DNA of 64,000 nucleotides from Octopus sinensis (Eukaryota), in assembly GCF_006345805.1 (NCBI RefSeq), contig NC_043022.1, forward strand, positions 24,304,001 to 24,368,000, given 5' to 3'. Below are positions 451 to 64,000 of this stretch, piece by piece. The position numbers and the translations under genes were made by a program. The notes under the pieces were generated by a model that was given only the letters and a program-made list of their open reading frames with translations, was not told the DNA's origin and made no database searches. Every line of letters starts with the position of its first letter. Positions within the stretch are counted from its first letter, which is position 1.

Positions 451-665
451 AGGATGAAAGGCAAAGTTCAAATTCCGCCGAGGTCAACTATGCCTTTCAT
501 CCTTCGGGGGTCGTTAAATAAAGTACCAGTTTCGCACTGGGGTCGATGTAATTGGCTTAATCCGTCCCTGTAACTTAGCGGAGGTCGATGTAATCGACTT
601 AATCCGTTTGTCTGTCCTTGTTTCTCCCCTCTATGTTTAGCCCCTTGTGGGTAGTAAAGAAATAT
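451..665 (+). mobile_element. SINE family B copy, 5'-truncated, with a short 5' inversion and an internal family-A insert
   Basis: B box GAGTTCAAATTCC, body GCCTTTCATCCTTCGGGGGTCG, tail GTGGGTAGTAAAGAAATA. Bases 451-463 are the reverse complement of 491-503. Confidence 0.85.
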
Positions 666-1595: not shown

Positions 1596-1893
1596 AGCAC
1601 TCCGTCAGTTATGACAACGAGGATTCCAGTTGATACGATCAACGGAACAGCCTGCTTGTGAAATTAATGTGCAAGTGGCTGAGCGCTCCACAGACATGCA
1701 TACTCTTAATGTAGCTCTCAGGGAGATTCAGCATGACAATGTGGAAAGCTGGCCCATTGGCTTACGGGTACAACTCGTTTTTGCGAGCTGAGTGGACTGG
1801 AGCAATATGAGATGAAGTAACTTGCCCAAGAGTACAATACACAATCAGGAATCAAATATACAACCTTACAATCTTGAACTGAATACCCTAACC
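1596..1893 (-). mobile_element. tRNA-headed SINE family E (degenerate)
   Basis: Reverse complement aligns by eye with the 19990-20316 copy (GGTTAGGG..TTC head, CTTGGGCAAG core-like motif, AATTTCACAAGCAGGCTGTTCCGTTGATC tail). Confidence 0.75.
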
Positions 1894-2310
1894 TATTTCT
1901 TTACTACCCACAAGGGGCTAAACACAGAGGGGACAAACAAGGACAGACAAACAGATTGAGTCGATTATATTGACCCCAGTGCGTAACTGGTACTTAATTT
2001 ATCGACCCCGAAAGGATGAAAGGCAAAGTCAACCTCGGCGGAATTTGAACTCAGAATGTAACGGCAGATGAAATACCTATTTCTTTACTACCCACAAGGG
2101 GCTAAACACAGAGAGGACAAACAAGGACAGACAAATGGATTAAGTCGATTATATCGATCCCAGCGCGTAACTGGTACTTAATTTATTGACCCCGAAAGGA
2201 TGAAAGGCAAAGTCGACCTCGGCGGAATTTGAACTCAGGACGTAACGGCAGACGAAGTACGGCTACACATTTCGCCTGGCATGCTAACGATTCTGCCAGC
2301 TCGCCGCCTT
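1894..2310 (-). mobile_element. SINE family B head-to-tail dimer
   Basis: Full tRNA-like head at 2310 (A box TGGCAGAATCG, B box GAGTTCAAATTCC), plus a second 184-bp headless unit. Junction palindrome GAAATACCTATTTC at 2070-2083. Confidence 0.9.
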
Positions 2311-3360
2311 TATTCTTGTTTCTTTTTTTTTTTAATACCTTAACCATTAAGCCACATGCCTTCACTAGTACCAACACTAGTACTATGCCTTCACTAGTAC
2401 CATGTCTTCACTAGTACCAACACTAAGAAAGCAGGCTTGAATATTACTACCCAAGCCACAGACAACATGCAGCAGAAAACCCTCAAAATGATTACAAAAT
2501 GCCAAATTTTACTGTCATTGAGGATGTCTCCTTGCAATCTCACATATATAACACAGCAAAATCTGCATCCCAAGGATTGATCTTCCTCTTTGAGCCAGAA
2601 GAGGCTTCAGTGAGATGTTAGCTGTTTATGAGATTTAATTGAGACCCACAATGGGATAACACTTCAACATCTAGCATCAACTTATATTTCTCAAATTTAT
2701 CAAATTATCTAAATAACTGCATATTAAATCAACCTATTCAAAATATCATTCACGAATTCTTAAATGATAATCCCATTATTATAAAAGATTAGTTTTTAAT
2801 AAACGACAACATTTACAAATATTATTATTAATAATAATAGACACATACAAATTCAGCACAACCTATTACATATTATAAATCATGGTTTGTTTATTAAGTT
2901 TAAAATACATCATTTTTTTTTTGATACATGTGTCTACATTCAAATTGATATAATTATAAATAACAATTAAAACCAATTTTTTCTTTGATGTTATAATTTT
3001 ATATATTTAATAACAGCAGAAAATTGTCTAGAACGACAATGTAAGTAGCAGTTGTTGCTGCTGTATACACTGCTATGCTAGACAATATTCACAAATCATA
3101 CACCACCAGACTCCAGTTCTGGTTAACAGACATACTGTGTCCTCTTGTTCTGTTTTCTACTGCTACTACAGTGGCCTCTGCTCTTCCCCACTGGTTCATC
3201 TTGTGCCATCTCTACCCAGGTATTTCTCCCACGTCTCTCTTCTTTCTCTTGTCACCTATATTGTATTAACCCTTTCGTTACTGTATTTATTTTGAGATGC
3301 TCTGTGTTTCTTTCAATTACTTTAAATATAACAAAGAATTCAGTAAAATAACCCTAACCA

Positions 3361-10544: not shown

Positions 10545-11130
10545 TATCTTTTGTTTGTTTCAGTCATTAGACTGTGGCCACGCTAGGGCATCAACTTGAA
10601 GTATTTTAGTTTCTATTGGTCTCATTTGCTGAACTACTAAGTTACAGGGACATAAACACACCAACACAGGTTGCCAAGTGGTGGTGCGTGACAAAGTCTC
10701 ACACACACACACGTGTGTGTGTGTGTATATATGACAGGTTTCTTTCAGTTTCTTATTTCTTTATTGCCCACAAGGGGCTAAATACAGAGGGGACAAACAA
10801 GGACAAAGGGATTAAGTTGATTACATCGACCCCAGTGCGTAACTGGTACTTAATTTATCGACCCTGAAAGGATGAAAGGCAAAGTCAGCATCAGCGGAAT
10901 TTGAACTCAGAACATAATGGCAGATGAAATACTGCTAAACAGGTCGCCCAGCGTGCTAACGTTCTGCTAGCTCGCCGCCTCGCTTCTTTCAGTTTCCACC
11001 TGCCAAAACCACTCACAAGGCTTCGGTCAGCCCGAGGCTATAGCAGAAGACACTTGCCCAAGGTGCCATGCAGTAAGACTGAACCTGGAACCACATAGTT
11101 GGGAAGCAAGCTTCTTACCACACAGCCATG
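10545..11130 (-). mobile_element. SINE family A carrying a nested family B monomer (10753-10983)
   Basis: The family B monomer is flanked by the 13-bp TSD TTCTTTCAGTTTC (10740-10752, 10984-10996) inside a family A copy. Confidence 0.85.
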
Positions 11131-13807: not shown

Positions 13808-14345
13808 ATCATCATCATCATTATTGTTTAACATCCGCTTTCCATGCTAGCATGGGTTGGACGATTTTGACTGAGGGCTGGCAAACCAGATGGCTGCACC
13901 AGGCTCCAATCTCGATTTAGCAGAGTTTCTACAGCTGGATGCCCTTCCTAATGCCAACCACTCAGAGAGTGTAGTGGGTGCTTTTTACGTGCCACCAGCA
14001 TGGGGGCCAGTCAGGCGGTACTGGCAACAACCTCACTCGAATCCTTTTACACATGCTACCAGCACAGGTACCAGTAAGGCGACGTTGGTAACAATCATGC
14101 TCGAATTAAGCCCTTTTACGTGCCACTGGTACGGAAGCCAGTTGGCTGCTCTGGCAACGATCACGCTTGGATGGTGCTCTTGGTACCCTACTAGCACGGG
14201 CATAAGTGCCAGTAAGGCGATGCTGGTAATGATCACGCTCGAATGGTGCCCTTTAAGTGTCACTGGCACGGAAGCCGGTTAGCCGCTCTGTCAATGATCA
14301 CGCTCGTATGGTGCTCTTTGCACCCTGCTAGCACAGACGCCAGTC
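13808..14345 (-). mobile_element. SINE family C with two ~138-bp internal units
   Basis: Reverse-complement tail CATCATCAT..TTTCCATGCTAGCATGGGTTGGAC. Internal units start at CCAGTAAGGCGA (14071 and 14209). Confidence 0.8.
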
Positions 14346-16450: not shown

Positions 16451-16843
16451 CTCTTTTACTTGTTTCAGTCATTTGACTGCGGCCATGCTGGAGTACCGCC
16501 TTTAGTCGAGCAAATCGACCCCGGGACTTATTCTTTGTAAGCCCAGTACTTATTCTATCGGTGTCTTTTGCCGAACCGCTAAGTGACGGTGACGTAAACA
16601 CACCAGCATCGGTTGTCAAGCAATGCTATGGGGACAAACACAGACACACACACATACATATATATATATATACATATATACGACAGGCTTCTTTCAGTTT
16701 CCGTCTAACAAATCCACTCACAAGGCATTGGTCGGCCCAGGGCTATAGCAGAAGACACTTGCCCAAGATGCCACGCAGTGGGACTGAACCCGGAACCATG
16801 TGGTTGGTTAGCAAGCTACTTACCACACAGCCACTCCTGCGCC
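16451..16843 (-). mobile_element. SINE family A, near full length
   Basis: Reverse complement of the same head-core-microsatellite-tail layout as 15049-15464. Confidence 0.92.
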
Positions 16844-17554
16844 TGATTTACATTTTGAGTTCAAATTCCACTGGAGTCTACTTTTCATCCTCTCAGGACT
16901 GATGAATAAGGAAAGAACCTGTCAAGTAATCGCTTACACTAACCCTCCCACCCCTGTAACTGCTGGCCTTGTGCCAAATTTTGAAACACTTATATGGCAC
17001 AATGAGAGGGAGGGTGAGGAGAGCAGTGGCGTGCATCATGAAAATGTTCTTGAAACACTTTCATCTGGCATATTTAACTCTTTCACATTCACATTCAAAT
17101 TATTTCGTGGTTAGCGTATTCAGCTCACATTCATAAGGTGGCGAATTCAATACCTATTTATTTACTACCCACAAGGGGCTAAACACAGAGGGGACAAACA
17201 AGGACAGACAAACGGATTAAGTCGATTACAAGTGTCTTCTACTATAGCCTCAGGTAGACCAAAGCCTTGTGAGTGGATTTGGTAGACGGAAACTGAAAGA
17301 AGCCCATCATATATCTGTATGATGGGCTTCTTTCAGTTTCCCCTCCACCAAATCCACTCCCAAGGCTTTGGATGGATGGGAGATTTCGCAGAAGACACAT
17401 GCCTAAGGTGCCATGCAGTGGTATAGAACCCAGAACCATGTGGTTGTGAGGCACACACACATACACGCATCCTGTTATCAGTTCAGGGGATATGGTAAGG
17501 TAAATTTAAGTAAAATACTCAAAAATATTAATAATGAGTTTAAACTTGTTTTAA

Positions 17555-19083: not shown

Positions 19084-19602
19084 GCAAAGTGGAACTTCAA
19101 CGTGGTCGCTCAATATGCTAGACATAGTAGCCAGATAGATGGATATATTTCCCTGAGATCCTTGAGATGAAGGTTACAGGAGATAATGTAGTTCATCCAA
19201 CTAACTTAAGCAATACAGAGGAGATGGTCATGGATGGAATACTGTTGGGTATACAAGCAAAGTGGAGCTTCAACATGGTCGCTCAATATGCTAGACATAG
19301 TAGCCAGATAGATGGATATATTTCCCTGAGATCCTTGAGATGAAGGTTACAGGAGATAATGTAGTTCATCCAACTAACTTAAGCAATACAGAGGAGATGG
19401 TCATGGATGGAATACTGTTGGGTATACAAGCAAAGTGGAGCTTCAACATGGTCGCTCAATATGCTAGACATAGTAGCCAGATAGATGGATATATTTCCCT
19501 GAGATCCCCGAGACGAAGGTTACAGGAGATAATGTAGTTCATCCAACAAACTTAAGCAACACAGAGGAGATGGTCATGGATGGAATACTGTTGGGTATAC
19601 AA
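19084..19602. repeat. Three near-identical tandem 173-bp units
   Basis: Units start GCAAAGTGGA at 19084, 19257 and 19430; 519 = 3 x 173. Confidence 0.95.
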
Positions 19603-31121: not shown

Positions 31122-32163
31122 ATACATGCTCAATCGATAGAAGTATAAAAATTGGTTACTTTGTGCCTCATTTTGAGGTGATCCAGAGAAGACCAGAATA
31201 GGGCAATAATTTGTGTTTGGTGAGTGGCCACCACTACAAGACAGAAATGAAATGTTAAATTTATATTTCTAGTAAGGTGATAAGCTGGCAGAATCAATAG
31301 CATCCTGAACAAAATGCTTAGCAGCAATTCAGCCATCTTCGCATTTTGAATTCATATTCTGCCAAGGTCATCCTTTCAGGGCTGATAAAGTACCAGTTAA
31401 GTACTGAAGCTGATGAACGCAAAATGTTTAGAAGATGACAAAGAAAACACGGACAGGACATTTGAAGCCTTCAATCTTCAGTCAAGAACCGGATCATCTT
31501 CGCAATTTCGGCTGATTAATCTTCAGATTGCCACCCCCAAGGAAAATCTAAGCTAAGCGCATTAGATTCCTTGGAAGAAAGCCTCGAATGTATACAAAAG
31601 AAAGACGGAAAAACGGACGATGTTACACGAATAAGAATACAAAAATACGTAAAAACAATAATAATAATACGTAAAAACAATAATGATAATAATAACAAAA
31701 ACACATATATATATATACACATATATATAAATGGAATTTTACCAAAAACTGGAACAAATATACATTAAAACAATTGCCATTTTTTCTTATTTAAAAACGA
31801 AAACTAACTCTCTATTAGCTCTCTTAATAACAACGCATGTGAGATTCCAGCTCAGCTTCTATGAGAGAATACAACAACTCATTTGAGGGTATTCTTATTT
31901 AAATGAAAAGCTTCCATTAGAATCTCATGTAAAAGAAACCGTTATTAAATTAGGAGCCAAACACATCTTAAATAACAGAAAACTGGGTTATTTTACTAAA
32001 TCCCTTCCAACTTCTTGGCTATTTTGGAAATTAATTGCAAAACAGATGCTGTATCTTTATTAGAAATATGCTCACACAAAGAACTGGGCATGAATTGTTC
32101 GAAAGCATTCATAATCTAATTAAAAAGAAGAAAATAATTGCCTTGATTAACTGTAAGTGAAAC

Positions 32164-35900: not shown

Positions 35901-36854
35901 CATCACACTACAATAGTTTACAAAAGAACCTTCAAACCTGGTACCGGTTCCATTCAGTTAGCCATGGTAAAATATCCACCCAATGTCGGTTTCAACAATT
36001 GGACTTACCTAAAAAGAGAAGAAAAATAAAGAATAGTAAAAATTGCTTTGAATTGTTGAAAATCTGAGTCATTCAATAATATTTGGAATTAATTTTGTCT
36101 TTCTTTCTTTTGGAAATCTTGGAATATCTTAGACTATAATTTTCTGCTATGGTTTCTCATGGCTAGACACAACAACAAGCTTTCCACAGAGTAAGTTAGA
36201 GTCAAGTGTACCAACTCCAGTATAAATATTATCATCATCATCATTTAGCATCTACTTTTCTTTTCCATAATTGCATGGGTCCAAAAGAGTTTATTAATGC
36301 AGATTTTCTATAATTGGACGCCCTTCCCATCAACAATTCTCACCAGTTTCCAAGCAAGGTAATAACAACCCATGACCAGATGTTCTCGCAGAATTTGAAC
36401 TCAGAATGTAAAGACAGACAAAATGCCGCTAAGCATTCTGCCTGGTGTGCAAATGATTCTGCCAGCTTGCTGCCTTCAATAATAATAATAATAATAACCC
36501 TTTCTACTAAAGGCATAAGGTTTGAAATTTTGGGGGAGGGGTCTAGTTGATTACATCGACCCCAGTGTTTCACTGGTACTCTACTAACTCTGAAAGGATG
36601 AAAGGGGAAGTGAACCACAGTGGAATCTGAAGGCAGGATATAAGAACAGGTGAAATACTGCTAAGCATTTTGCCCGGCATGCTAACGAAATAATAATAAT
36701 AATGATAAGAGCACCCAGAGAGCTCAAACCTCTGCCGAGGCAACACCAATGTCCTCTTGATGATTAGCCAGAGATGATTTTTAAAATGAGAATATCTGAA
36801 ATAAACTCGACTGCCATCACAAACGAGAATACTAAAAATGAACCCGACCGCTCT

Positions 36855-40880: not shown

Positions 40881-41115
40881 GGTGGCGAGTTGACAGAAAC
40901 GTTAGCATGCCAGGCGAAATGCGTAGCCGTATTTTGTCTGCCGTTACGTTCTGAGTTCAAATTCCGCCGAGGTCGACTTTGCCTTTCATCCTTTCGGGGT
41001 CGATAAATAAAGTACCAGTCACGCACTGGGGGTCGATGTAATCGACTTAATCCGTTTTTGTCTGTCCTTGTTTGTCCCCTCTGTGTTTAGCCCCCTTGTG
41101 GGTAGCAAAGAAATA
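40881..41115 (+). mobile_element. SINE family B full-length monomer
   Basis: Head GGTGGCGAGTTGACAGAAACGTTAGC, B box, and tail GCAAAGAAATA. Other monomers at about 39652-39856, 55648-55868 and 56873-57000. Confidence 0.88.
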
Positions 41116-43705
41116 TATATGTACGGACGGTGGGGGGGGGCGAACAGATGCTAAAGTGATTAAAAAGAAAACAAATGCAAAAACAGCCACACTGTGCACT
41201 CCCCCCCCACCACCACTACTCTAATCAATATGATTCCCTACGTCACTGCCAACTTCTGCCACTACACTAATACAGAAACCATATAACTGTCCCAAATACA
41301 AGATATTGACATAAAATGACATTTACATTTGGATTAAGGTAGCAAATTAAAAAACAATGTACACCAATTTATAGAGTAATCATGGCGAAGGTCAGAGAGG
41401 GAGGCAGAGGGGTTAGAAGCAACCACATACATCAAAAAGGCAGGAAAAGAAATCAATGGTTTGAGACAGTACTCTTCACTAGTTTTCTGCCAAATCCTTC
41501 AAGGATATTTAATATTATATCATGATGATGACAAACATTTTCTCTATAAACTACTGATGACGCCTTAGATAAGTTCGTCTCTGAAGATTTCCAGTGAATC
41601 GGTAACTATGAGCTATTAATTGTACAGCTGACTGGACTGTCTATTCCCACAGAACTGATTACAAACACAAAAGAATGACAGAAAGAAAAAGAGAGGCGAA
41701 GAGAAGAAAAACATGAAAAGAAATGTAAATCATTGTGGTAAAGAGGTGGTAGGTTAAGACAGCGCAGTGCTTTATGTAAGATTAAACTTAAAAGTTTATC
41801 GTTTCGTAATGATAATAGATCTACTACTGCAGGGTTTCATATGGCGCCGGTGGATAGTTCTGCAGATGCTAAGTGAATCATCATCATCCCTCGATGTTCA
41901 TTTCCCATGCTAGCATGGGTCGGACGGTTTGATAAGGAGCTGGTAAGATAGGAGGGGCTGCACCAGGCCCCATTGTTTCTTCTGGGCTTGGTTTCTGTGG
42001 CCGGATCATCATCATCATCATTATTGTTTAATGTCTGCCTTCCATGCTGGCATGGGTTGGACGATTTGACAGGAGCTGGGGAGGCAGGAGAATACACCAG
42101 ACTTCTGTGTCTGCTTTGACAAGGTTTCTGTGGCTGGATGCCCTTCCTAATGCCCACCGCTTTACAGAGTGTACTGGGTGCTTTTTATGTGGCACCAGTT
42201 CCAATGCTTTTTATTTGGAACCAGCACCAGTGCTTTTTTATGTAGCACTGAATTGGAGGCAAATATCTCCCTGGCTACAACAGAGATGTCTGATTTAAGC
42301 ACAAGGTCAGCAATTTTAAGGGGAGATGGCTACACAATACCCTCAACCTCCAGTTGAGCACTGGAGTTGATGTAATCAACTTAATCCCATCCCTGAAATT
42401 GCTGGCCTTGTGCCAAAATTTGAAACTATTATCATTAAGGCATCGAGCAGGCAGAGTTGTTTGCACGATAGAAAAAAAAAAACGCTTAGTGGTATTTATT
42501 CCAGCTTTACATTCTGAGTTCAAATCCCATCAAGGTCAGCTTTGCTTTTTATTCTTTCAGGATCAATAAAATAAGTACCAGTCATGTACTGGGGTTGATG
42601 TAAGCGACTAGCCACCCCACCTCCTCCTCCCTCAAAATTTCAGTCCATGTGTCTGAAAGTAAAAAGGATTATTATTTTATTGTTTAAGGCGGCTAGCTTC
42701 CAGAATTGTTAGCCTGTTGGACAAAATGTTTAGTGGTAAATCTTCTGGCCTTATGTTCTGAGTTCAAATTGATCTTGGCCAACAGCCAGATCCATCCCAC
42801 AAATGACAACAGCTATTTGTCAAAACTCTGCAAGTGAAATAAATAATAATGGCAAAGTATTATGGATATAAGTGAGCCATCCAAGTAGTTCTTTTAAAAA
42901 CTGCGTTATCTTAAAAGGAAACACCAGAAATTAACCCTAATTAATTCCTCTGGATAACGGTTATTAAAACAGGTGGAACCGTCAGAGCTTCCACATCAAA
43001 GTACTTTCTGATTTAATGAGCTACTAAAAACGAGGTAGGTGTTTGATAGTGCTGCTTTGCTATACCAGAGATTACGACAGTTAAAAGCTGAAAGCTGTAC
43101 AAAGTACATGTACGAAACACAGCAAGAACTTGAAGAGAAAGAAGTTGGGGAGGAGGGGGGGGCAGTACCCCACCACCACCACCACACCTCCACGAACCAA
43201 GCAAGACAATAAAAGCAAGAGCAAATAGCTATGAAGAAAAATTTATGGTAAAGGATGTAAAATCTCTATTTGAATAGAGTAAAGCCTAGAAAGAAGTGTG
43301 TATTAGTTTGTTTGATGGTAATTTATGACTGTCGTTGGTGGCCACCACATTGAGAGATAAACTAACTTCCTAGATTGTTTTTAGAAAAGAGAAAGAAAAA
43401 AGAAGGAGGCGGTGGAGGTGTGGATAGATACAAGGATATTTCTTCAAGGTATGTATTAACATTTTATAACTGACACTGGAGTATTTTTAGTAAGACATTG
43501 GAAACTGGCTGGCAACAGATTCGTTTCGCTCAAGCACTACTGTGTATGTATATGCATACGCTTGAAACTGTGTGTGCATATATACATCATATTTTTGTAT
43601 ATGTATATATGTAATGTATACCTCTGTGTAAGTATGCAGGTGTGTGTGTTTAAGTGTATATATATATATATATAATAACAAAATAATAAATAAAACATAT
43701 GCATA

Positions 43706-44085: not shown

Positions 44086-44759
44086 ATACATACATACATA
44101 TATGTACGTACCTACATCTATATGTAGATATATATACATGCATATATGGGTACAGGACACCAAAAAAATGTCAAACACAATGAGAAACGAAAACATAAAC
44201 ACAAAACTAAGGAACTGGACATTTTTCTTAAACAACGAACAAATAGAGTACAGGACATACAACACAAGAAACATTCCCCTTCTTCAGCCGCCTCTGTTTC
44301 ATCTACTCCGCATTTCGTATATATATATATATACATACACACACACTGGTACAGCCATGCACACACGTGTGTATGTGTGTGTGTGTGATATCAGTTTATT
44401 TTTTCACTTGGTTTAGTCACTGAACTGCAACCATATTGAGGTACTGCCTAGAAGGTACTTATTTTATTGGTCTGCTTTTGCTAAACTGCTAAGTTACAGG
44501 GGAGGTAACATACACACACACACACACACACACACACGTAGCAAGCTTCCATGCATTTTCAATCTAACAATTTCACCCAGTTCTCTTGAGCCTAAAAACT
44601 TGATTACATAAAATTTAGTCTGGTATCCAAGGCATTAAAATCCTTTTGATACCAACCCACCCGAGACTGTGCTTGCCTCTATGATACAAACTCCATTTTA
44701 AAGAGATTTAAATGAAAACTTCCCATCAAAATTTCATGTTGATTTATGATCCAAATACC

Positions 44760-44944
44760 TATTTCTTTATTACCCACAAGGGGCTAAACATAGAGGGGAC
44801 AAACAAGGACAGACATAGGTATTAAGTCGATTAGATCGATCCCCAGTGCGTCACTGGTACTTAATTTATTGACCCCGAAAGGATGAAAGGCAAAGTCAAC
44901 CTCGGCGGAATTTGAACTCAGAACGTAGCGACAGACGAAATACC
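44760..44944 (-). mobile_element. Headless unit-length SINE family B monomer bounded by the multimer junction at both ends
   Basis: AAATACC|TATTTC at 44753-44765 and GAAATACC|TATT at 44937-44948. Confidence 0.85.
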
Positions 44945-45458
44945 TATTGGAATGTGGTAAACATCCAAGACATAAACCAAAGAGATGTCTTAGGGATGCC
45001 TTCAAAAGTAGCCGTAACTCATTAACATCCAGATTATTGTCTCAGATGTAATGCTTATCTATTCATATTGTTTTCAATTAATCATGCATTATCTTGTAGC
45101 CTTGAGATTTCGATGAAGTGGTTGTTTATTTTAAGAATGAAATTACAAGGTAAATGGCAGAGGCCAAAACTTGTCAGTTTGAACATAAAACAGGTAGAAT
45201 ATTTTGGCAGGATATGGCAGGTTACACGGCTAAATGGATAAAGATCTTAGTGTGAATATTGGCTTCAAATTTTGACACAAGGCCAGCAATTTCAGGTCGA
45301 TTACATTGACTCCAGTGCTCAACTGGTAATTATTTTATTAGCCCTGAAAGCATAAAAGGCAAAATTGACCCTGGCTGGATTTGAACTTAGGATGTAAAGA
45401 CAGGCAAAATACCGTTAAGCATTTCATTAACGATTCTACTTGATCACTACCTTATGAA

Positions 45459-49932: not shown

Positions 49933-51261
49933 TTTTTTTTTTTAAGGGCTAACACTTATTCTTTTGATCTGTTTTGCTGAACCCCTATATTACAGGGACT
50001 TAAATACACCAAGCAGTTGTGGGGGACCAACACAGGCACATACACATATGTATATATGATAGGCTTCTTTCACTTTCCATCTACCAAATACACTCACAAG
50101 GCTTTGGTGGGCCCGAGGCTATATAGCAGGAGACATTTGCCCAAGGTGCCACACAGTGGGACTGGACCTGTCGTATATGTGTGTGTGTGTGTGTGTGGTC
50201 TTTGTATCTGTATTTGCCCCCCCACTTGACAACTGGTTTTGGTTTGTTTATGTCTCTGTAACTTAGCAGTTTGGCAAAAAGAGACTCATAGACTAAGAAC
50301 CAGGCTTTAAAAAGAAATAAATACTGGGGTTGATTCATTTGATTTTAAAAAATTCTTCAAGGCTGTGCCCCAGCATGGCCACAGTCTAATGACTGAAACA
50401 AGTAAACAATAAAAGATGTGTGTGTGTATATACATCTACTGCATGTAAATATACACACAGATCTACCACAACACTACTAGAGCCACCACAAACACTACAA
50501 CCACCACCACCACAGAACTATCACTACAACACTGCTACAGCTACCTGGACGCTGGTAATATTTCTATCAACAACATCCGACAAACAAGTGTAAAAATATG
50601 AAATATGATGTTGCAATGTACTTCGGAGTCAATTAAAAAGAAATAGCAGGAGGAATGGTGGTGGGGGTGGTGGGGATGTTGCCCAATAAACAGAAACACG
50701 ATTAAAACAGTTTCATCATGAAATATTTTCTTAATGACTTGGCTTTTACTTCGTTTCCCGGTGCAATTAGTTTCTGAACAAAGGAGCGAATCACAGAGGG
50801 TGGCCATCAGACAAATCCTTCATCATTTCTTTCAGCCTTCTAACAGTGGTGGTCATGCTGGGGCATCATTTTGAAGGGTTTAGTAGAATAAATCAATAGC
50901 AGTACTTTTATTTTTAGGGCCCTGCTACTCATTCTATCAGTCTCTTTTGCCAAGGGACATAAAATGAAGTACCAGTTGAGCACTGGAGTCAGTGTAACTG
51001 ACTTAATCCTCCCCTTAAAATTGCTGGCCTTGTGCTGAAATTTGAAACCATTATATGTATGTGTGTGTGTGTGTGTTTGCTTCATCAAGACTCACCCTGG
51101 AGTTGGACAGCAACAACAGTAACACGCCAAGGGGGGCCTTGAAATAATTGATTGACCTGCAAGAAGTAGCAGTCAAACTGTCTTCACATCATTCGATAAA
51201 TGAATGTATTGTCAAAGTAGAAGTCTGACCAAGGGATAAACAACAACAAACAACAAAGGGG

Positions 51262-51660
51262 CAGAAACATTAGCATGCTGGGCGAAATGCTTAGCGGTAT
51301 TTCGTCTGCTGTTACATTCTGAGTTCAAACTCTGCTGAGGTTGACTTTGCCTTTCATCCTTTCGGGGTCGATAAATTAAGTACCAGTTACGAACTGGAGT
51401 CGATATAATCAACTTAATCCATTCCTCTGTCCTTGTTTGTCCCCTCTGTGTAGCCCCTTGTCAACAGTAAAGAAATAAGTATTTCATCTGCCGCTACGTT
51501 CTGAGTTCAAATTACGCCGAGGTCGACTTTGCCTTTCATCCTTTTGAGGTCAATTAAATAAGTACCAGTTACGCACTAGGGTTGATATAATCGACTTAAT
51601 CCATTTCTCTGTCCTTGTTTGTCCCCTCTGGGTGTAGCCCCTTGTGGGCAGTATAAAAAT
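51262..51660 (+). mobile_element. SINE family B head-to-tail dimer with TSD
   Basis: 10-bp TSD AACAAAGGGG (51252-51261, 51661-51670) and junction GAAATA|AGTATTTC at 51477/51478. Confidence 0.9.
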
Positions 51661-52324
51661 AACAAAGGGGGAATATTTTTAGGAGAGAACTGATGAATGC
51701 AACATGATGGCTGGCTTTAATTGAATGAAGAAGATTTCATGGTTTCTTGGACAGGACTGCTGCTGGTGTTAAGTGAAGAGAAGTTAGGAGTTTCTCGGAT
51801 ATACAAAGGCTGCTGGAACCGAGTGAGGAGGAATTAAGAGCTTCTCAGACGTACTATGGCTGCAGGTACTGGGTAGAGAGGAGTTCATTACTTACAATAA
51901 AATTAGTGAGTGGTGTATCTGATAGAGGTATGTGTGTATGTGTGAGAGAGAGAGAGAGGGAGAGAGAGAGAGGGAGAGAGAGAGAGGGAGAGAGAGAGAG
52001 GGGGGTATTAATAATTTGTTGGATGAGGTCTTTAAGAATAATATCGTGGTTGAAGATATCACACAAGTAACAAAAGAACAGAAACAAAAAGAAAAACAAC
52101 AGAACAAAACAACAAAAAAAAAACAAAACTACTGATGATGTAATATCAATGAAATAAAGATTGTAACCTCTCTGGCCTCTCTGAAAGCGCATCTCATAAG
52201 GTGCAGAGATGCAAGGCTTAGATTGTGTAAAACCAAAATGAGGATGGCTGATGGTGGAGACAAGTGGAGGTGAGGTGATGATGGTGGTGGTGGTAATGGT
52301 AGTTCTTGTTGTGTTTAAGTGCAA

Positions 52325-53290: not shown

Positions 53291-53681
53291 ATCTTTGATC
53301 ACGAGCAGAAGTAGTGGGGGAGCATCACAGCCATGTGTTGAGAGGGATTCTTTGGGGTTTGAATAATTCACCTCTGGAAACATGGGTGTTTTGTTCAACA
53401 TCCTTAAACAACCCTTATTCAGGGACCTTTTTGAGCAGGATGTGTTACTTGACCAGAAGAAAATTCTAACTGGGCCCCACCTGCAAGGTCATGTGCTGTT
53501 TATCGTGATATGAGATCAGCATGTCGCGCACATATGGTTGTGATGTATGTGCCTGGTGCACCCTTATCAGACGAGTAGTCATGATGGGTATACTGGGCTT
53601 TGTATATTTTACCCCAGTGTCACTTTGATGGCATGCACTGCTCTCTCACTCAATAATAATAATAATAATAATAATAATAAT
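53291..53681 (+). mobile_element. Probable non-LTR retrotransposon 3' UTR fragment with (AAT)n tail
   Basis: Non-coding stretch ending GCACTGCTCTCTCACTC-(AAT)n that truncates a family A SINE at 53290. Confidence 0.55.
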
Positions 53682-53880
53682 TTCTACTACAAGCACAAGG
53701 TCTGAAATTTTGGTGGGAGGGGAGCTAGTCAATTACACCGGGCCCCAGTATGAAACTCATACTTACAATGATGAAAGGCAGAGGTTGACCTTGGCGAAAT
53801 TTGAACTCAGAATGTAATGATGAACAACATGCTGCTAAGCATTTTGCCTGATGTGGTAATGATTCTGCCAGATCGCTGCC

Positions 53881-53919
<39 letters not shown>

Positions 53920-56009
53920 GTTTCAAATTTTGGCACAAGAGCAGCTGTTTTATAAGAGTTGGGATGACATTAATTACATTGATCTTGACTAGTACTTATT
54001 TTATTACCCATGAAAAGATGAAATGCAAAGTCAAACCTAGGCGGAATTTGAACTCAAAAAGTAAAGATAGACAAAATGCTGCTAAGTCTGGCATTCTAAC
54101 AGTTCTGCTAGCTTGTTGCCGTAATAATAATCTAACCCACAGGGCACCAAACTGGCACCACATGAATCATTTACAGTTCAGTTGCCTTTCACTTCTGTTG
54201 ACTTGAAACCTTCTGTTAAAATAGCAGTAATATACCAAGGGCGCATCAGAAGCCTAGACATAAGGTCACCACACCCCCAGAAAGACTCCCAACTGCGACA
54301 ACATCTTAGCCTAAATTTACTGCTTGTTGTTTTACCAGCAGTAAAACAACTAATGCTTTACAGTAAGCTACTAAGTGACATTTTAGTACACCTCTATCTC
54401 TCCATATATATATATGTGTGTATGTATGTATGTATATATGTATGTATGTATGTATATATATTTCATTTTTGAAATTTGGTTTCAAGATTCTTTATGTGAG
54501 TTCGCGTGTTGAAGCATATTTTGTTGTGTCTGGGGAAAGTCATTCTCTTTTAGTGCCTTATGATTTAACACACTCACTGGTTAAGTTTCCACTCAATTAC
54601 TCATTTATTTTGTTCTATGCATGCACCGCCACTCCAACTGAGACCACCCCTAGTTTTAAAGTGATCTAAATGAAAGCCTTCCATCAAAATTTCGTGTTAA
54701 TTAATGTTTCAAATACCAGCTTAAACCCTTCAGTATTTCAACCATCCATAACCAGCCCAAATATTTTATGTTTTATGCAAAAAACGACCTGATTCAACCT
54801 TTTATACCTATCCTACCATGCCATTTTAAATATATACAATCACATCATTTAAATTTTTAAGTTAAAAGATAATGCATTATTAATTCAAAACATACATTTG
54901 ACAGGGTAATCTGAATGCTAAAGGGTTAAAAAGGGCAAAGTTATTTTGATAAATTCTTTACTAGTTAATTGAAGCAAAGGCAATGTATATCAACAGAAAT
55001 ATGGTAACAATAGGGGTATGATGAATCCTAACACAATGTTTCATTATGGACGGTCTAGCATCATCATCATCATCAACAACAGCACCACCTAAACTGTTAA
55101 CCATGTTGGCATTGTTACTGCTGCTGCTACTACTACTACTGTTTAGTCTCTATACATACAGCTGTTCATGATTATATTCATTGAACAAGATTTCCCAACA
55201 GGTTTACAGAAATGAAGAAGAAAAAAAAAATCCACCCCATTCAAACATTTACCCCTTCAAAGGAAGAAAACAACAACAAAAATAACTCTTACCACAAGCA
55301 AACTTAACTCTGTGTGTGTGTGTGTGTGGACATACATGCAGAGACAGGTGCTGTGTGTGTACATGGTGCTTGGAGAGGTAGCAAGCCTTGAAATAGCAAC
55401 AGCTGTGAACACACACACACAGAGTTCTACACATACATCTGGTTTTATACACACACATACACAAGAGTTCTATGCACACATCTGCATAGATTTGCATGCA
55501 TACACAAATATAATACTCTTACGCACACATGCACCCCCACCACACAAACACTAGCTGTGTACACAGCTCCAGATGTGGATTTGAACCAGAAACATTTATT
55601 TCTAATTTATGAACAGCAATATGCACAGGCAGAATGCAATATGTGCGCTGGCAGAAACGTTAGCAAGGCGGGCGAAATGCTTAGCCATATTTCGTCTGTC
55701 TTTACATTCTGAGTTCAAATTCCGCCGAGGTCGACTTTGCCTTTCATCGTTTTGGGGTCAATAAATTAAGTACTAGTTTCGTTGGAGTCGATGTAATTAA
55801 CTTAATCCCTTCGCCTGTCCTTGTTTGTCCCCTCTATGTTTAGCCCCTTGTGGGCAATAAAGAAATAAGAAGTTTGTTTCTTAACCACATGGTTCCAGGT
55901 TCAATCCCACTGTGTGGCACCTCAAGTAAGTGTCTTCTGCTACAGTTTGGGCCAACCAAAGCCTTGTGAATGGGTTTGGTAAACAGAAGGGGTCCCAAAT
56001 ATATATATA

Positions 56010-56228: not shown

Positions 56229-57226
56229 TGTGTGTATCTGTGTCGTGTTTGTCCCCCCACCACTGCTAAACTTGAGCAGATATGGCAAAAGAACTAATGG
56301 AGAAAGTACCATACTTTAAAAACAAGAAGAAGAAAAAACAAAAAAAGAAAGGACTGGGGTTGATTTGTTCAATTAACCCTTTGAGACAGTGCCCCAGTAT
56401 GACCACAGTCTAACGACTGAAACAAGTAAAAGATAAAATATAAAAGAAAATATTTCAATAAAAGAGAAGCTGAACCACATTGAAAGAAATAAGCCGAAGT
56501 AAAAGCTGCTCTCATAAATGAATAATGCTCAAATTATTATACAACATAATTAAGTCATTCCTTTTGATTTCGCCGACTGACCTCCTCACCTCCCACCTCT
56601 TTACATACATAGAGGAGAAATAGGTCAGTGGGTCAAGTAATTAACATCCAGTCCACACTCAATAGAGAACCGCTAATCCTTTCTACCCCACTTCTTTTCT
56701 TTCCCCGCTCTCTCTTTCTCACCAAGCCAGTGGTTGGACTGCTACTAGTGGTCATGGCTGTGATAATATTGTGTTGGCGATGGCTGCAGTGGTGATTGTA
56801 GTAGTAATGGTTGTTAGGTGCAGTATTGGTGATAGAAGTAATAGTAGTAATAATGGTAGTTAGGTACAGTTTTGGCGGCGAGCTGGCAGAAACGTTAGTA
56901 CGACAGGCGAAATGCTTAGCCATATTTCGTCTGCCGTTACGTTCTGAGTTCAAATTCCGCCAAGGTCGACTTTGCCTTTCATACTTTTGGGGTCGATAAA
57001 TATAGTTCACTGTAGAGTTGGAGATAGTAGTGAGAGTGGTAGTAATGAAAGGTAGCTAGCTGTAGTATTGGAGATGGTTAGTAAAGGTAACTATCATATT
57101 TTCCAGCAAACAAGTCCAAGAAGTTACATATTGTGTAAACACTGAAACATGTCAATATCTTTCCAAACTCTACATCTTGCAAGGAATTCCCCAACTTCCT
57201 AAGTCATTTTGGTACATAAATCAACT

Positions 57227-61830: not shown

Positions 61831-62353
61831 TCTCATCTTCTCTCTCTCTCACACACACACACAATCTACATTCGAAACATGAAGCTGCACGTTTGAAAAC
61901 AAACGGTAAGATGGTCACGGCGGGAACTCAGGGGTTGATCTGAGACAATTTCTTAGTCAGACTTCCCTTCCTCTAATACGCAAAGGTCTGTCTGATGCCC
62001 ACTGAACGATAAGCGATTAGGTGACGATCATGCTTGGACCTGAACGGGAAATTGAAACCCTGTCGCTGGAGTTTGCATCTAAAACACCACAGATCAATAA
62101 AAATTTCTGGAGGTATTTAATTAAGGAGAATAAACACAAGCAAGGTGCGAGCGAGTATTAATGAGACTTAAGAGCTTGTAGTATGTGTGCCAGTATATTT
62201 TATACATACATACACACACATATATACACAAGCACCTAATATATTTCTATACCTACACACACACACACACACACATAGGTAAGTGTCAATGCACGGTACT
62301 CTCGGCCCTTGAGTAACTGTAACTTCTGTCGATTGTTAGTAATGGAAAATATA

Positions 62354-62764
62354 TATTTCTTTACTACCCACAAGGGTCTAAACATGGAGGGGACAAACAA
62401 GGACAGACAAAGGGATTAAGTCGATTACATCGACCCAGTGCGAAACTAGTACTTTATTTATCGACTCCCGAGAGGATGAAAGGCAAAGTCGACCTCGGTG
62501 GAATTCGAACTCAAAACGTAACGATAGACGAAATACCTATTTCTTTATTACCCACAAGGGGCTAAACACAGAGGGGACAAACAAGGACAGACATAGGCAT
62601 TAAGTCGATTACATCGACCCCAGTGCGTACCTGGTACTTAATTTATCGACCCCGAAAGGATGAAAGGCAAAGTCGACCTCGGTGGAATTCGAACTCAAAA
62701 CGTAACGATAGACGAAATACCGCTAAGCATTTCGCCCGGCGCGCTAACGTCTCTGCCAGCTCGA
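62354..62764 (-). mobile_element. SINE family B head-to-tail dimer with TSD
   Basis: 9-bp TSD GAAAATATA (62345-62353, 62765-62773), junction palindrome at 62530-62543, and a second unit of 184 bp. Confidence 0.92.
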
Positions 62765-63104
62765 GAAAATATACTCGTGTTTTGAGTTCTATTTTCCTAT
62801 TTGCATCACTGTATATACACACACTTGCGCGCGCGAATTCGGATTTACAAACAGAGGCAAAAAGAAAAAAGCAACAACAAAAAAAAAAGAAAAGCATGTA
62901 CTCAATACATGTAATGGAGTTTATTTCTTTATTCGAAGCTGAGTGAACCCGCCCTCTGCCGCTCGCTGCTCTGTTTCAATTTTACACAGCACTGACATAT
63001 ATTATTTATAATATAATCACTCTCTCTCTCTCTCTCTCTGTCTCTCACACTCACACACACTCACTCACTCACTCACTCATTCACTCACTGCTGGTACTAC
63101 TGTT

Positions 63105-63624
63105 TTTTCGTCTGCCGTTACGTTGCGAGTTCAAATTTCGCCGAAGTCGGCTTTGCCTTTCATCCTTTCGGGGTCGATAAATTTAGTACCAGTTTCGCAC
63201 TGGGGTCGATGTAATCGACTTAATCCATTCGTCTGTCCTTGTTTGGCCCCTTGGGAGTAGTAAAGAAATAGGTATTTCGTCTGTCGTTACGTTGTGAGTT
63301 CAAATTCCGCCGAGGTCGACTTTGCCTTTCATCCTTTCGGGGTCGATAAATTTAGTACCAGTTACGCACTGGGGTCGATGTAATCGACTTAATACTTATG
63401 TCTGTCCTTGTTTGTCCCCTCTGTGTTTATCCCCTTGTGGGTAATAAAGAAATAGGTATTTCGTCTGTTGTTACGTTCTGAGTTCAAATTCCGCCGAGGT
63501 CGACTTTGCCTTTCATCCTTTCGGGGGTCGATAAATTAAGTACCAGTTCCGCACTGGGGTCGATGTAATCGACTTAATACCTATGTTTGTCCTTGTTTAG
63601 CCCCTTGTGGGTAGTAAAGAAATA
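63105..63624 (+). mobile_element. SINE family B headless trimer
   Basis: Junctions GAAATA|GGTA at 63270/63271, 63454/63455 and 63624/63625. Flanks GGTACTACTGTT (63093-63104) and GGTACTACTACTGTT (63625-63639) look like one TSD. Confidence 0.92.
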
Positions 63625-64000
63625 GGTACTACTACTGTTACTCAGCCCAGACGTAGCATGAACTGGCTCAGCGCGCACACACATATCCAAAAGAGTTTTT
63701 CAACCCAGTCTTTACACGCTATTGTTTTACAGCTTTGTATGCGTGCTTCGGGATACACTATTCCAAAAAAAAAAAAGAATACACACACACACACACACAT
63801 ATATAAATAAACATACACACATTGTTGGCACAACCGCTCTTCAGTCCAGACGCAGCATGATCTGGCACACACACATACATACACACACACACCTGGGCTG
63901 TAAGAACTGTACCAGCAGAATAAATTAAGAGAAACTTTACCGATTCCACAGAGTCCAGCAGAAAAATCTACAGCTAGACTGCTGCTGCTGCTGCACAGCA

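What the first reader, a model, noticed from the sequence alone, without database searches (positions are those of the whole stretch)
62345..63639. A tRNA-derived SINE that spreads as head-to-tail concatemers joined at its anticodon loop: candidate circular-RNA / rolling-circle retroelement
Seen: four separate multimers (1894-2310, 51262-51660, 62354-62764, 63105-63624; three with a single TSD) use the same junction, tail ...AAAGAAATA joined to (G/A)GTATTTCGTC, giving ~184-bp units. In the full head, GGTATTTCG is the 3' side of a 10-bp stem (CGGGCGAAAT-GCTTAGCGGT-ATTTCGTCTG) lying between the A and B boxes, which is the anticodon-arm position. The break falls in the loop after CTTAGC, equivalent to 37/38 if CUUAGCG is the loop. 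The tail GAAATA is exactly complementary to TATTTC, so the junction is a hairpin (GAAATA-GG-TATTTC) that replaces the lost 5' strand. Established: tRNAs are cleaved in the anticodon loop, RtcB-type ligases circularise RNAs whose ends are held by a stem, retrozymes spread as tandem copies of small circular RNAs, and non-LTR RTs can jump end-to-end. Inference: the Pol III transcript is cut in the anticodon-like loop, and the 3' fragment either circularises and is copied rolling-circle style or is repeatedly re-primed by template jumping. No ribozyme core was seen in the unit. I do not know of this mechanism being described for a SINE, but I cannot check the literature.
Basis: partly seen in the sequence, partly recalled or inferred. 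Interest (0 to 1): 0.85.

Follow-up and report, generated by a model that had tools for sequence, protein, structure and literature searches.

The report
SINE copies joined head-to-tail at hairpin tip
A short retrotransposon (SINE) in this animal genome is often inserted as two or three copies joined at one exact point, the tip of an RNA hairpin, most likely because the copying enzyme hops to a fresh RNA there; no circular RNA is needed to explain it.

Summary
Four loci (1894-2308, 51262-51661, 62354-62764, 63105-63624) carry two or three ~184-bp units joined five times at the same point, ...AAAGAAATA|(G/A)GTATTTC. Each array sits inside one pair of target-site duplications (all four, not three).

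- **Not an anticodon loop.** The break lies at the boundary between a UAGC tetraloop and the 3' arm of a 12-13-bp stem, inside a ~34-bp hairpin (z = -3.06). No tRNA or ribozyme model matches.
- **No rolling circle needed.** Three arrays start with a full head, which a circle made of the 3' fragment could not supply. In the two young arrays the units carry different subfamily markers, and their nearest relatives lie at other loci.
- **New finding.** The 3' flanks of 11 independent insertions resemble the unit start GGTATTT (44/77 matches against 21-28 expected, P<=1e-4). The template RNA therefore carried GGUAUUU after its tail.

Best reading (about 0.45): during target-primed reverse transcription the cDNA leaves the template at the hairpin tip. 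It then re-anneals on the GGUAUUU that follows another SINE RNA's tail. Rivals are multimeric master genes, repeated homology-targeted insertion, and circular RNA.

The parts
62765..62773 (-). Array J: 5' target-site duplication TATATTTTC
   Evidence: Perfect 9-nt direct repeat of 62345-62353
62722..62764 (-). Array J: head. It holds the A-box-like TTAGCGCGCCGGG, the 5' arm of the hairpin and the UAGC loop, and ends ...GCTTAGC
62538..62721 (-). Array J unit 1 (184 bp). It starts GGTATTTCG at the first base of the hairpin's 3' arm and carries the 'AAT(G/A)CCTATG + TAA tail' subfamily markers
62354..62537 (-). Array J unit 2 (184 bp), joined ...GAAATA|GGTATTTCG. It carries 'CCC' subfamily markers shared with H and B. 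Its first 65 nt are identical to unit 1, including private variants A13, T24, G32 and A39
62345..62353 (-). Array J: 3' target-site duplication TATATTTTC
63093..63104 (+). Array K: 5' target-site duplication GGTACTACTGTT
   Evidence: Matches 63625-63639 apart from one TAC repeat
63105..63270 (+). Array K unit 1. It has no head, begins about 4 nt inside the unit (TTTTCGTCTG), has a 15-bp deletion and belongs to a divergent subfamily (8.8% non-CpG distance from consensus) although its CpGs are intact
63271..63454 (+). Array K unit 2, of the 'ACTTATG/TAA' subfamily. Its nearest relatives are K3, F and J1
63455..63624 (+). Array K unit 3, of the 'ACCTATG' subfamily, with a 15-bp deletion. Its nearest relative is F, at another locus
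63625..63639 (+). Array K: 3' target-site duplication GGTACTACTACTGTT. It starts with GGTA, the same bases as the unit start
1882..2345 (-). Array A. In order: TSD, a 25-nt A-rich filler, full head, unit 1 (2078-2261, which starts CG), unit 2 (1894-2077, which starts GG), TSD
51253..51670 (+). Array G (old). In order: TSD, 5'-truncated head, unit 1 (51296-51477), unit 2 (51478-51661, junction AG), TSD. The two units share private variants C135 and G162
44753..44948 (-). Copy F: a headless single unit (44760-44944) that starts exactly at GGTATTTCG. It is bounded by the 11-nt direct repeat AATAGGTATTT
10754..10979 (-). Copy B: full-length monomer (head plus one unit), TSD GAAACTGAAAGAA
39650..39857 (+). 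Copy D: monomer with a slightly 5'-truncated head and a 13-nt internal deletion, TSD AGTATC
40881..41115 (+). Copy E: full-length monomer with 5 extra nt (GTATA) between the 5' TSD and the head
55647..55867 (+). Copy H: monomer with head
56874..57006 (+). Copy I: monomer with a full head, with its 3' part lost
17155..17230 (-). Copy C: 3' fragment of a unit. The tail is followed by GGTATT
452..664 (+). Copy R1: a copy of the same family, 5'-truncated at about nt 76. It has a 15-nt snap-back inversion at its 5' end and a 42-bp internal duplication

Best explanation
The arrays are concatemers made while the element is copied into the genome by target-primed reverse transcription (TPRT) using a partner LINE's enzyme.

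The SINE RNA folds its first ~88 nt into a long hairpin. The 184-nt unit begins at the first base of the hairpin's 3' arm (GGUAUUUCG...). The RNA that is copied also carries GGUAUUU immediately after its tail (...AAAGAAAUA-GGUAUUU). So these 7 nt occur twice, once inside the element and once at the 3' end.

Reverse transcription starts at the tail and runs toward the 5' end. Once the cDNA has copied the 3' arm up to the apical loop, its 3' end (...GAAATACC) leaves the template in about half of the passages. It then pairs with the GGUAUUU that follows the tail of another SINE RNA and synthesis resumes. Each transfer adds one exact 184-nt unit.

If a later passage reads through the hairpin, the array ends with a head (A, G, J). 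If the cDNA is instead joined to the target at that point, the copy is headless (K, F).

Shown: the exact join, the single TSD pairs, the hot spot at the hairpin tip, the flank resemblance to GGTATTT, and the mixed origin of units. Inferred: the strand transfer itself, the cause of the departure (hairpin stall, bound protein, modified base or a cut RNA), and how the RNA acquires its 3' GGUAUUU (a Pol III stop in a following T run, or transcripts of existing arrays).
For: 1. Five of five joins are in register with no extra bases, and each array lies within one TSD pair.
2. There is a hot spot at the hairpin tip. Of 9 events in which the cDNA did not reach the 5' region, 7 lie within 4 nt of the loop/3'-arm boundary (5 joins plus the 5' ends of F and K1). 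Eight passages read through into the head. The hairpin is significant: consensus -37 kcal/mol, z = -3.06, 0 of 200 shuffles as stable. The apical stem is also present in a sister SINE family.
3. The 3' flanks and TSD starts of 11 independent insertions match GGTATTT at 44 of 77 positions. Random window positions give 21 +/- 4, and positions after ATA give 27.6 +/- 4.4 (P<=1e-4). The individual flanks are GGT (A), GGTA (K), GGTATT (C), GGTATTT (F), AGTAT (D), TATATTT (J) and TATAT (E). In TPRT the TSD start mirrors the RNA's 3' end, which is established for LINE-1.
4. The first base of internal units is G or A in 6 of 6 and never C, while next to the head it is C in 4 of 8. In array A unit 1 starts CG and unit 2 starts GG. 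This fits a base copied from the acceptor's terminal GG.
5. Full-length copies show extra bases at their 5' junction: 25 nt in A, 5 in E, 2 in B. The internal joins show none. In the yeast Zorro3 system, head-to-tail joins are uniform when internal and 3' homology exists, and ragged with untemplated bases when it does not (PMC3510499).
6. Units inside the young arrays come from different sources. CpG sites are 10/11 to 11/12 intact in J and K (hand count on the alignment). Yet J1, K2 and K3 carry the ACCTATG-type marker while J2 and K1 do not. J1's nearest units are K2, K3 and F, and within-locus distance is not clearly below between-locus distance (8.4% against 9.9%, P = 0.09).
7. LINE reverse transcriptases do make concatemers by template jumping (L1 ORF2p in vitro, PMC10830420).
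8. Another copy (R1) carries a snap-back inversion, a separate footprint of template switching by this machinery.
Against: - The sample is only 4 arrays and 11 insertions in 64 kb, so all statistics are small-sample.
- The 3' end of the RNA was not observed. GGTATTTCG has only three Ts, which is not a canonical Pol III terminator.
- A chicken-and-egg problem remains. The terminal GGUAUUU is most easily supplied by transcripts of arrays that already exist.
- J1 and J2 share an identical first 65 nt with four private variants. This needs an extra homologous switch, gene conversion or another origin.
- K1/K2 and G1/G2 also share private variants.
- No partner LINE is present in the window, so the enzyme's properties are unknown.
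Confidence: 0.45

Rival explanations
1. Multimeric master genes. An array with a head is itself transcribed by Pol III. The LINE enzyme starts at any tail-GGUAUUU junction inside the long RNA. Monomers, dimers and trimers are then all copies of array masters, and the join was invented only once or a few times.
For: This reading accounts for four observations:
- the exact join;
- GG at every junction, as against CG next to the head;
- the GGTATTT-like flanks of monomers;
- the private variants shared within a locus, namely J1/J2, G1/G2 and K1/K2.

It is also compatible with the best explanation rather than exclusive of it.
Against: - No variant other than the junction base is shared by second units across loci, and units do not cluster by position.
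- J (TAT-type then CCC-type) and K (divergent, then TAT, then TAT) would need different masters that were already mixed. So joining of unlike units must still have happened several times.
- The model does not explain why the headless copies F and K1 end at the junction.
- J carries a T4 run in both units (GTTTTGAG), which would stop Pol III.
Confidence: 0.2
2. Repeated, homology-targeted insertion. A new RNA ending in GGUAUUU is primed at the GGTATTT of a resident copy, or at the GGTA-like flank after its tail. Its 5' side is then resolved by homology. Each event adds one headless unit in register inside the old TSDs.
For: - The flank microhomology shows that priming prefers GGTATTT-like targets.
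- F is exactly such a headless unit, bounded by AATAGGTATTT.
- J1[1-65] being identical to J2[1-65] would be a long duplicated target or homology tract.
- It explains why the distal unit starts GG.
- The sister family with (ATT)n tails also sits head-to-tail at three loci, as expected if tails attract new insertions.
Against: - It needs two or three independent hits at the same nucleotide in 4 of 11 loci, although ordinary insertions use only 3-7 nt of microhomology, which is available at very many genomic sites.
- None of 8 sister-family heads that carry GG(T/C)ATTT has a nested unit.
- For K, the added units would need 4-nt duplications, whereas the TSDs measured here are 6-16 nt, mostly 9 or more.
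- CpG retention gives no age difference between units in J and K (hand count).
Confidence: 0.12
3. The RNA is cut in the apical loop. The 3' fragment, whose ends can pair (GAAAUA with UAUUUC), is circularised or ligated end to end by a tRNA-type ligase. It is then copied round and round, as with retrozymes.
For: - The break is in a loop, after a pyrimidine (UAGC|GG).
- In the headless RNA the 5' UAUUUC and the 3' GAAAUA pair in the predicted fold.
- The joins are exact, and headless copies exist (F, K).
- A circle or concatenated RNA would also place GGUAUUU after every tail.
Against: - No self-cleaving ribozyme model hits five units and three junctions on both strands at E<=10.
- No tRNA-like fold is present to recruit tRNA enzymes.
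- Three of four arrays begin with a head, so a template jump is needed anyway.
- Units of the young arrays J and K were different at birth, which excludes one monomeric circle for those loci.
- Internal units never begin with the C that is commonest next to the head.
Confidence: 0.08
4. Change at the DNA level after insertion. Unequal crossing-over or replication slippage duplicates part of a single inserted copy.
For: - Gene conversion between neighbouring units probably does occur, as the J1/J2 identical tract suggests.
- Authors who described SINE arrays in bivalves invoke unequal recombination (PMC11481361).
Against: The same breakpoints, the hairpin tip and the last base of the tail, recur at four unrelated loci with no TSD between units. 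The units within J and K belong to different subfamilies.
Confidence: 0.03

Closest known systems
TSD1-(SINE)n-TSD1 arrays of tRNA-related SINEs in the blood clam Scapharca (Anadara) broughtonii (Martelossi et al. 2024, PMC11481361)
   Same: The architecture is the same. There is one TSD pair. The first unit has a complete head, the internal units lack the head, and the last unit has the complete tail.
   Different: In the clam the internal units are described as truncated in the tail as well. No join position, RNA structure or flank signal was reported, and only unequal recombination was discussed. Here the join maps to a hairpin tip and the tail is complete.
Template jumping and switching by non-LTR reverse transcriptases. 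Examples are Zorro3 head-to-tail junctions (PMC3510499), L1 ORF2p concatemers in vitro (PMC10830420) and chimeric retrocopies such as the Magnaporthe tripartite pseudogene (PMC2104539)
   Same: One cDNA continues on a second RNA. In Zorro3 the preferred join lies between an internal tract and the identical 3'-terminal tract, and it is then uniform.
   Different: Those products are circles, in-vitro products or one-off chimeras of unlike RNAs. Here the same SINE is added repeatedly at about half of passages, from an internal hairpin tip rather than the RNA's 5' end.
Retroviral minus-strand strong-stop transfer through the terminal R repeat (established knowledge, not tested here)
   Same: A short sequence is present twice in the RNA. 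This lets the nascent cDNA end re-anneal at the 3' end and continue.
   Different: In retroviruses the repeat is at the two RNA ends, the transfer is obligatory and it yields one genome. Here one copy is internal, the transfer is optional and it adds extra units.
Non-LTR retrozymes: tandem hammerhead-ribozyme repeats that give small circular RNAs (bioRxiv 10.64898/2026.07.22.740005). Also, from memory, the Schistosoma Sm-alpha SINE-like hammerhead repeats
   Same: Both are short non-coding units in head-to-tail arrays flanked by TSDs.
   Different: Every retrozyme unit encodes a self-cleaving ribozyme. None is detectable here, and the arrays carry a Pol III-type head.
Dimeric or complex SINE families (Alu-type), as defined in SINEBase (PMC3531059)
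   Same: Two SINE modules are joined head to tail and can propagate as a unit.
   Different: Those dimers are fixed families with position-specific differences and full monomers. Here the copy number varies from 1 to 3, the later units lack the head, and the units are drawn from several subfamilies.
Slippage retrotransposition in SINE and LINE tails (Kajikawa & Okada 2002; Tu et al. 2004, both cited in PMC3531059; content recalled from memory)
   Same: The cDNA end re-aligns on a repeated template sequence at the start of reverse transcription.
   Different: The repeat there is a few nt of tail microsatellite. Here the re-alignment spans a whole 184-nt unit.

Membership tests
tRNA-derived SINE (Pol III type 2 promoter) | Internal A and B boxes at tRNA-like spacing | tested here: met
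   TTAGCACGCCGGG (A-box-like) and GAGTTCAAATTCC (a good B box) lie about 52 nt apart in all head-bearing copies. This rests on sequence inspection; promoter activity was not tested.
tRNA-derived SINE (Pol III type 2 promoter) | Head recognisably similar to a tRNA (cloverleaf or tRNA model hit) | tested here: not met
   ARAGORN finds 0 genes. Rfam gives no hit at gathering score in the window, and no tRNA hit at E<=10 on the J/K region or on copy E. The predicted fold is a ~34-bp hairpin.
tRNA-derived SINE (Pol III type 2 promoter) | Short, interspersed, many copies, variable-length TSDs | tested here: met
   There are 11 independent insertions in 64 kb, with TSDs of 6-16 nt.
tRNA-derived SINE (Pol III type 2 promoter) | 3' region shared with a partner LINE | not testable with these tools
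   The window holds no LINE or reverse-transcriptase ORF, and no host-genome collection is available.
tRNA anticodon-loop cleavage product (tRNA half or tailless retropseudogene type) | Break inside a 7-nt anticodon loop closed by a 5-bp stem in a cloverleaf | tested here: not met
   The loop is 4 nt (UAGC) on a 12-13-bp stem, and the break is at the loop/3'-arm boundary.
Retrozyme or ribozyme-bearing tandem retroelement | Self-cleaving ribozyme in each unit | tested here: not met
   No hammerhead, twister, HDV-like or other ribozyme family hits 62300-63700 at E<=10 on either strand. CUGAGUU in the unit does not fit the CUGANGA core (read by eye).
Retrozyme or ribozyme-bearing tandem retroelement | Unit-length circular RNA | not testable with these tools
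   No transcript data are available.
Fixed dimeric SINE family | Position-specific diagnostic differences shared by all copies | tested here: not met
   Only the first base of the unit differs by position. Otherwise units do not cluster by position. The sample is n = 4 arrays.
SINE-derived satellite, or TSD1-(SINE-TSD1)n array formed by unequal recombination | TSD or flank sequence repeated between units, with variable register | tested here: not met
   No bases lie between tail and next unit in 5 of 5 joins.
TSD1-(SINE)n-TSD1 concatemer (bivalve type) | One TSD pair, head only on the first unit, complete tail on the last | tested here: met
   Arrays A, G and J fit. K is the same but has lost the head. 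The description comes from PMC11481361.

The most novel reading that the evidence does not exclude
The SINE RNA is cut at the tip of its hairpin. The headless 184-nt fragment closes on itself through its GAAAUA/UAUUUC ends and is ligated into circles or chains by a host RNA ligase. These ribozyme-free circular RNAs are a regular template of the LINE enzyme. That would make the element a Pol III-driven, protein-processed analogue of retrozymes.
Probability: 0.08. Interest if true: 0.85.

Novelty: new variant of a known kind. Interest (0 to 1): 0.5.

Why it matters
SINE arrays inside a single target-site duplication have been noted in a bivalve but never explained.

This window points to a concrete, testable rule. 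A few bases are present both at the tip of an RNA hairpin and just after the tail. The reverse transcriptase can therefore restart on a new RNA, and it does so in roughly half of its passages.

If the rule holds genome-wide, three things follow:
- It would show that the initiation and template-switching steps of target-primed reverse transcription can be read from insertion anatomy in a non-model animal.
- It would explain how SINE-derived tandem repeats, and eventually satellites, are seeded.
- It would explain how new copies inherit a T-rich Pol III stop right after the tail.

It also warns that repeat annotation by monomer consensus miscounts insertion events in such genomes.

Tried and rejected
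1. **tRNA and anticodon identity.** ARAGORN and Rfam were negative.
2. **Ribozymes.** Rfam was negative at E<=10. A hand check for an HDV-like P1/P3 arrangement at the unit start did not fit.
3. **The head as a diverged copy of the unit's 3' end, making the monomer a 1.25-mer of a permuted repeat.** Local alignment was no better than shuffles (P = 0.41).
4. **A significant junction hairpin.** It is not significant (z = +0.48).
5. **More copies for a genome-wide survey.** All attempts failed, so no survey was possible.
   - A conserved 23-mer found only five metagenome contigs (two of them identical over the stretch read) that share a ~35-nt core of a different repeat.
   - The same 23-mer found nothing in bacterial/archaeal genomes or viral contigs.
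   - A protein-style search with the antisense reading frame across the join returned one 543-bp contig with a single monomer.
6. **Clustering of units by position (one dimeric master) or strictly by locus (identical at birth).** Neither pattern was seen.
7. **A partner LINE in the window.** No candidate ORF was found.
8. **The A-rich filler at the 5' end of array A as a known 3' end elsewhere in the window.** There is no second copy.
9. **Literature search.** No report of these octopus-type arrays or of this mechanism was found.
Full report
**What the window is.** The 64-kb window is AT-rich (35-47% G+C) and full of microsatellites. It has no convincing protein-coding ORF. It looks like intergenic or intronic DNA of an invertebrate animal. 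From memory the SINE resembles octopus repeats, but I could not test that. One SINE family ('family 1') occurs at 11 independent places. A complete copy has two parts. The head is 47 nt: GGCGGCGAGCTGGCAGAAACGTTAGCACGCCGGGCGAAATGCTTAGC. The body is 184 nt, starting GGTATTTCGTCTGCC and ending GTAGTAAAGAAATA. There is no simple-repeat tail.

**Check of the observation.** Tandem Repeats Finder finds four arrays with a period of about 184 bp.
- Reading and aligning the copies shows that arrays A, G and J are head + unit + unit. Array K is three units without a head.
- All five internal joins are in register: ...AAAGAAATA followed directly by GGTATTTC (AGTATTTC in G).
- Each array is bounded by one pair of direct repeats and none lies between units. 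The repeats are A 12 nt with one mismatch, G 9 nt, J 9 nt, and K 12/15 nt.
- So the arrays were made at insertion, or by something that respects the old insertion boundaries. The join is far too regular for chance.

**What the break point is.**
- The head is not detectably a tRNA. ARAGORN finds nothing. Rfam finds nothing at gathering score. The tRNA model gives no hit even at E<=10 on regions containing intact heads.
- Instead, nt 1-88 of the element fold into one long hairpin of about 34 bp. For the consensus this is -37 kcal/mol, z = -3.06, with 0 of 200 shuffles as stable.
- The apical stem is 12-13 bp, CGGGCGAAAUGCU/GGUAUUUCGUCUG, capped by the tetraloop UAGC. The same apical stem is predicted for the consensus of a sister family with a different tail.
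- The head is also significantly similar to the reverse complement of the body start (P about 0.01).
- The repeated unit begins at the first base of the 3' arm. The break is therefore the loop/3'-arm boundary of a long hairpin, not position 37/38 of an anticodon loop.
- A-box-like and B-box motifs are present, so Pol III transcription is plausible.
The small hairpin this creates at the join is not thermodynamically notable (z = +0.48).

**A hot spot for leaving the template.** I counted every place where the cDNA must have stopped or moved.
- Eight passages ran through the hairpin into the head (A1, B, D, E, G1, H, I, J1).
- Seven ended within 4 nt of the hairpin tip. Five of these are joins. 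The other two are the 5' ends of the headless copies F (44760-44944) and K1.
- Only two other truncations occur, R1 at about nt 76 and C at about nt 160.
- Under uniform truncation, seven of nine events in a 9-nt window of a 231-nt element is vanishingly unlikely. This is my own arithmetic on those counts.

**A new observation: the flanks look like the unit start.** The 7 nt after the tail of the 11 independent insertions match GGTATTT at 44 of 77 positions. Random window positions give 21 +/- 4, and positions following ATA give 27.6 +/- 4.4 (P<=1e-4).
- Examples are F GGTATTT, C GGTATT, K GGTA, A GGT, D AGTAT and J TATATTT. In A, K and J these bases are part of the TSD.
- A twelfth copy, from a metagenome contig, gives 4/7.
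- In target-primed reverse transcription the nicked target strand pairs with the 3' end of the RNA, so the start of the TSD mirrors that end. This is established for LINE-1. The RNA being copied therefore had GGUAUUU right after its tail.
- The match never extends beyond 7 nt.

**Are the units of an array copies of one molecule?** This is a hand count on the alignment. CpG sites are almost all intact in J (10/11 and 10/11) and K (11/12, 11/11 and 10/11). They are decayed in G (5/12 and 7/12) and partly in A (10/12 and 7/12). So J and K are young, and most differences between their units were present at birth.
- Those differences include linked subfamily markers shared with other loci. AAT(A/G)CCTATG plus T14 occurs in F, J1, K2 and K3. 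CCC, T91 and T96 occur in J2 and H. K1 is a third, divergent type.
- At non-CpG sites the nearest relatives of J1 are K2, K3 and F, and the nearest relative of K3 is F.
- Mean within-locus distance (8.4%) is not clearly below between-locus distance (9.9%; permutation P = 0.09).
- Units do not cluster by position either.
- Some private variants are shared within a locus. J1 and J2 are identical over their first 65 nt, including A13, T24, G32 and A39. G1 and G2 share C135 and G162. K1 and K2 share G24 and T85. The sources were therefore related, or later conversion occurred.

**The first base of the unit.** Next to the head, the two bases after the loop are CG, CA, TG or AG in six of eight copies, with C first in four of eight. 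In internal units they are GG in five of six and AG in one, never C. In array A, unit 1 has CG and unit 2 has GG. A fragment simply cut after UAGC and copied should often start with C.

**Best explanation.** Taken together, I think the arrays arise by a homology-guided strand transfer during reverse transcription. The cDNA is copied through the 3' arm to the hairpin tip and ends ...GAAATACC. This end can pair with the GGUAUUU that follows the tail of another SINE RNA. Synthesis resumes there and adds one exact unit. This accounts for:
- the precise joins;
- the GG at joins, which would be copied from the acceptor's terminal GG;
- the flank signal;
- the headless copies;
- the mixed units;
- the heads on arrays A, G and J, where the last passage read through.

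Two published results bear on this. Joins without extra bases contrast with the 2-25 extra bases at the 5' ends of full-length copies B, E and A. In the yeast Zorro3 system, head-to-tail joins are uniform when an internal tract matches the 3' tract, and ragged with untemplated bases otherwise (PMC3510499). L1 ORF2p makes concatemers by template jumping in vitro (PMC10830420). The snap-back inversion at the 5' end of copy R1 (452-466 is the reverse complement of 488-502) is a separate footprint of template switching.

Several things are not shown. These are why the enzyme leaves at the tip (stall, bound protein, modified base or a cut RNA), what the true RNA 3' end is, and which LINE does the work.

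**Rivals.**
- Array masters transcribed as a whole, with initiation at any internal tail, would explain the joins, the GG and the flank signal. But J and K would need masters that were already mixed, so unlike units must have been joined repeatedly anyway. It also does not explain 5' ends at the join. I treat it as complementary (0.2).
- Repeated insertion of headless units into the GGTATTT of resident copies explains J's identical 65-nt tract and copy F neatly. However, it demands several hits on one nucleotide at 4 of 11 loci, and no sister-family head is hit (0.12).
- The circular-RNA model is not excluded as a minor route.
- Post-insertion unequal crossing-over cannot give the same breakpoints at four loci (0.03).

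**Comparison with what is known.** The architecture matches the 'TSD1-(SINE)n-TSD1' arrays reported in the blood clam, which were described without a mechanism (PMC11481361). The mechanism I favour combines known LINE template switching with a terminal-redundancy logic like retroviral R-mediated transfer. It is not a retrozyme, because there is no ribozyme. It is not a fixed dimeric SINE family. I therefore rate it a new variant of a known kind. Its interest is moderate. It gives a specific, falsifiable rule for how SINE concatemers and SINE-seeded tandem repeats arise, but it rests on four arrays in one window.

**Limits.** No collection available here holds the host genome. Scans and a protein-style search returned only unrelated repeats sharing a ~35-nt conserved core, plus one extra monomer. 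So the genome-wide survey, RNA-end mapping and functional tests remain to be done.

Noticed in passing
window 452-664 (+): This is a 5'-truncated copy of the same SINE. Its 5' end carries a 15-nt inverted segment (GGATGAAAGGCAAAG, the reverse complement of the CTATGCCTTTCATCC found 22 nt downstream). That is a snap-back or twin-priming-like footprint. It also has a 42-bp internal partial duplication around GGTCGATGTAATCGACTTAATCC.
   Followed up: partly
window 36391-36703 (-), 42350-42790 (+), 53660-54128 (-); also 16848-16990, 31283-31400, 45296-45430, 50962-51055: A sister SINE family shares the head hairpin and central region. It has different 3' parts that end in (ATT)n, in two tail variants. 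At three loci these copies sit head-to-tail, with a full head directly after the (ATT)n tail of the upstream copy. So SINE-next-to-SINE arrangement is common in this genome, but there the join is at the tail microsatellite.
   Followed up: partly
window 2309-2333 (-): A 25-nt A-rich filler (AAAAAAAAAAAGAAACAAGAATAAA) lies between the 5' TSD and the head of array A. Copies E and B have 5 and 2 extra nt at the same place. These may be untemplated additions or short abortive jumps at the RNA's 5' end. The filler has no second copy in the window.
   Followed up: partly
L001-L005 (metagenome contigs), e.g. L004 1620-1657: Five environmental contigs (L001 and L003 are identical over the stretch read) share only a ~35-40-nt core with the SINE (ACTTTGCCTTTCATCCTTTCGGGGTCGATAAAT). 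In them the core sits inside an otherwise unrelated repeat. This suggests a conserved SINE central domain shared across taxa. From memory it may be of the Nin-DC/Deu type, but I did not verify that.
   Followed up: partly
window 62354-62764 and 63105-63624: The two young arrays J and K lie only 340 bp apart in opposite orientation. Between them are an A-rich stretch and (CT)n/(CACT)n microsatellites. I could not judge whether this proximity is chance or a local insertion hot spot.
   Followed up: no
window 11976-13598 and 14071-14334: A 336-bp tandem repeat (4.5 copies, 88% matches) has an internal ~62-bp sub-repeat (GGTGGCACA...CCATCCGA.CGTGGCCGT.GCCAG). A related 137-bp repeat lies nearby. 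Similar sequence recurs near 17.8-18.2 kb, giving the shared ORF peptide LQLDALPNANHS.
   Followed up: no
window 19084-19602 (+): There are three copies of a 173-bp unit at 97% identity, unrelated to the SINE. This looks like a recent tandem triplication.
   Followed up: no
window 16760-16850 (+), 55885-55920 (+); L006 480-530: A third short repeat with a canonical tRNA-like B box (GGTTCCAGGTTCAATCCCAC..GTGGCAC) lies next to SINE copies. It is probably another SINE family.
   Followed up: no
window 63248-63258 and 63598-63610: Units K1 and K3, but not the middle unit K2, carry the same 15-bp deletion between the direct repeats TGTTT(G/A).CCCCT. This is either a recurrent slippage deletion or a sign of a deleted subfamily.
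   Followed up: partly
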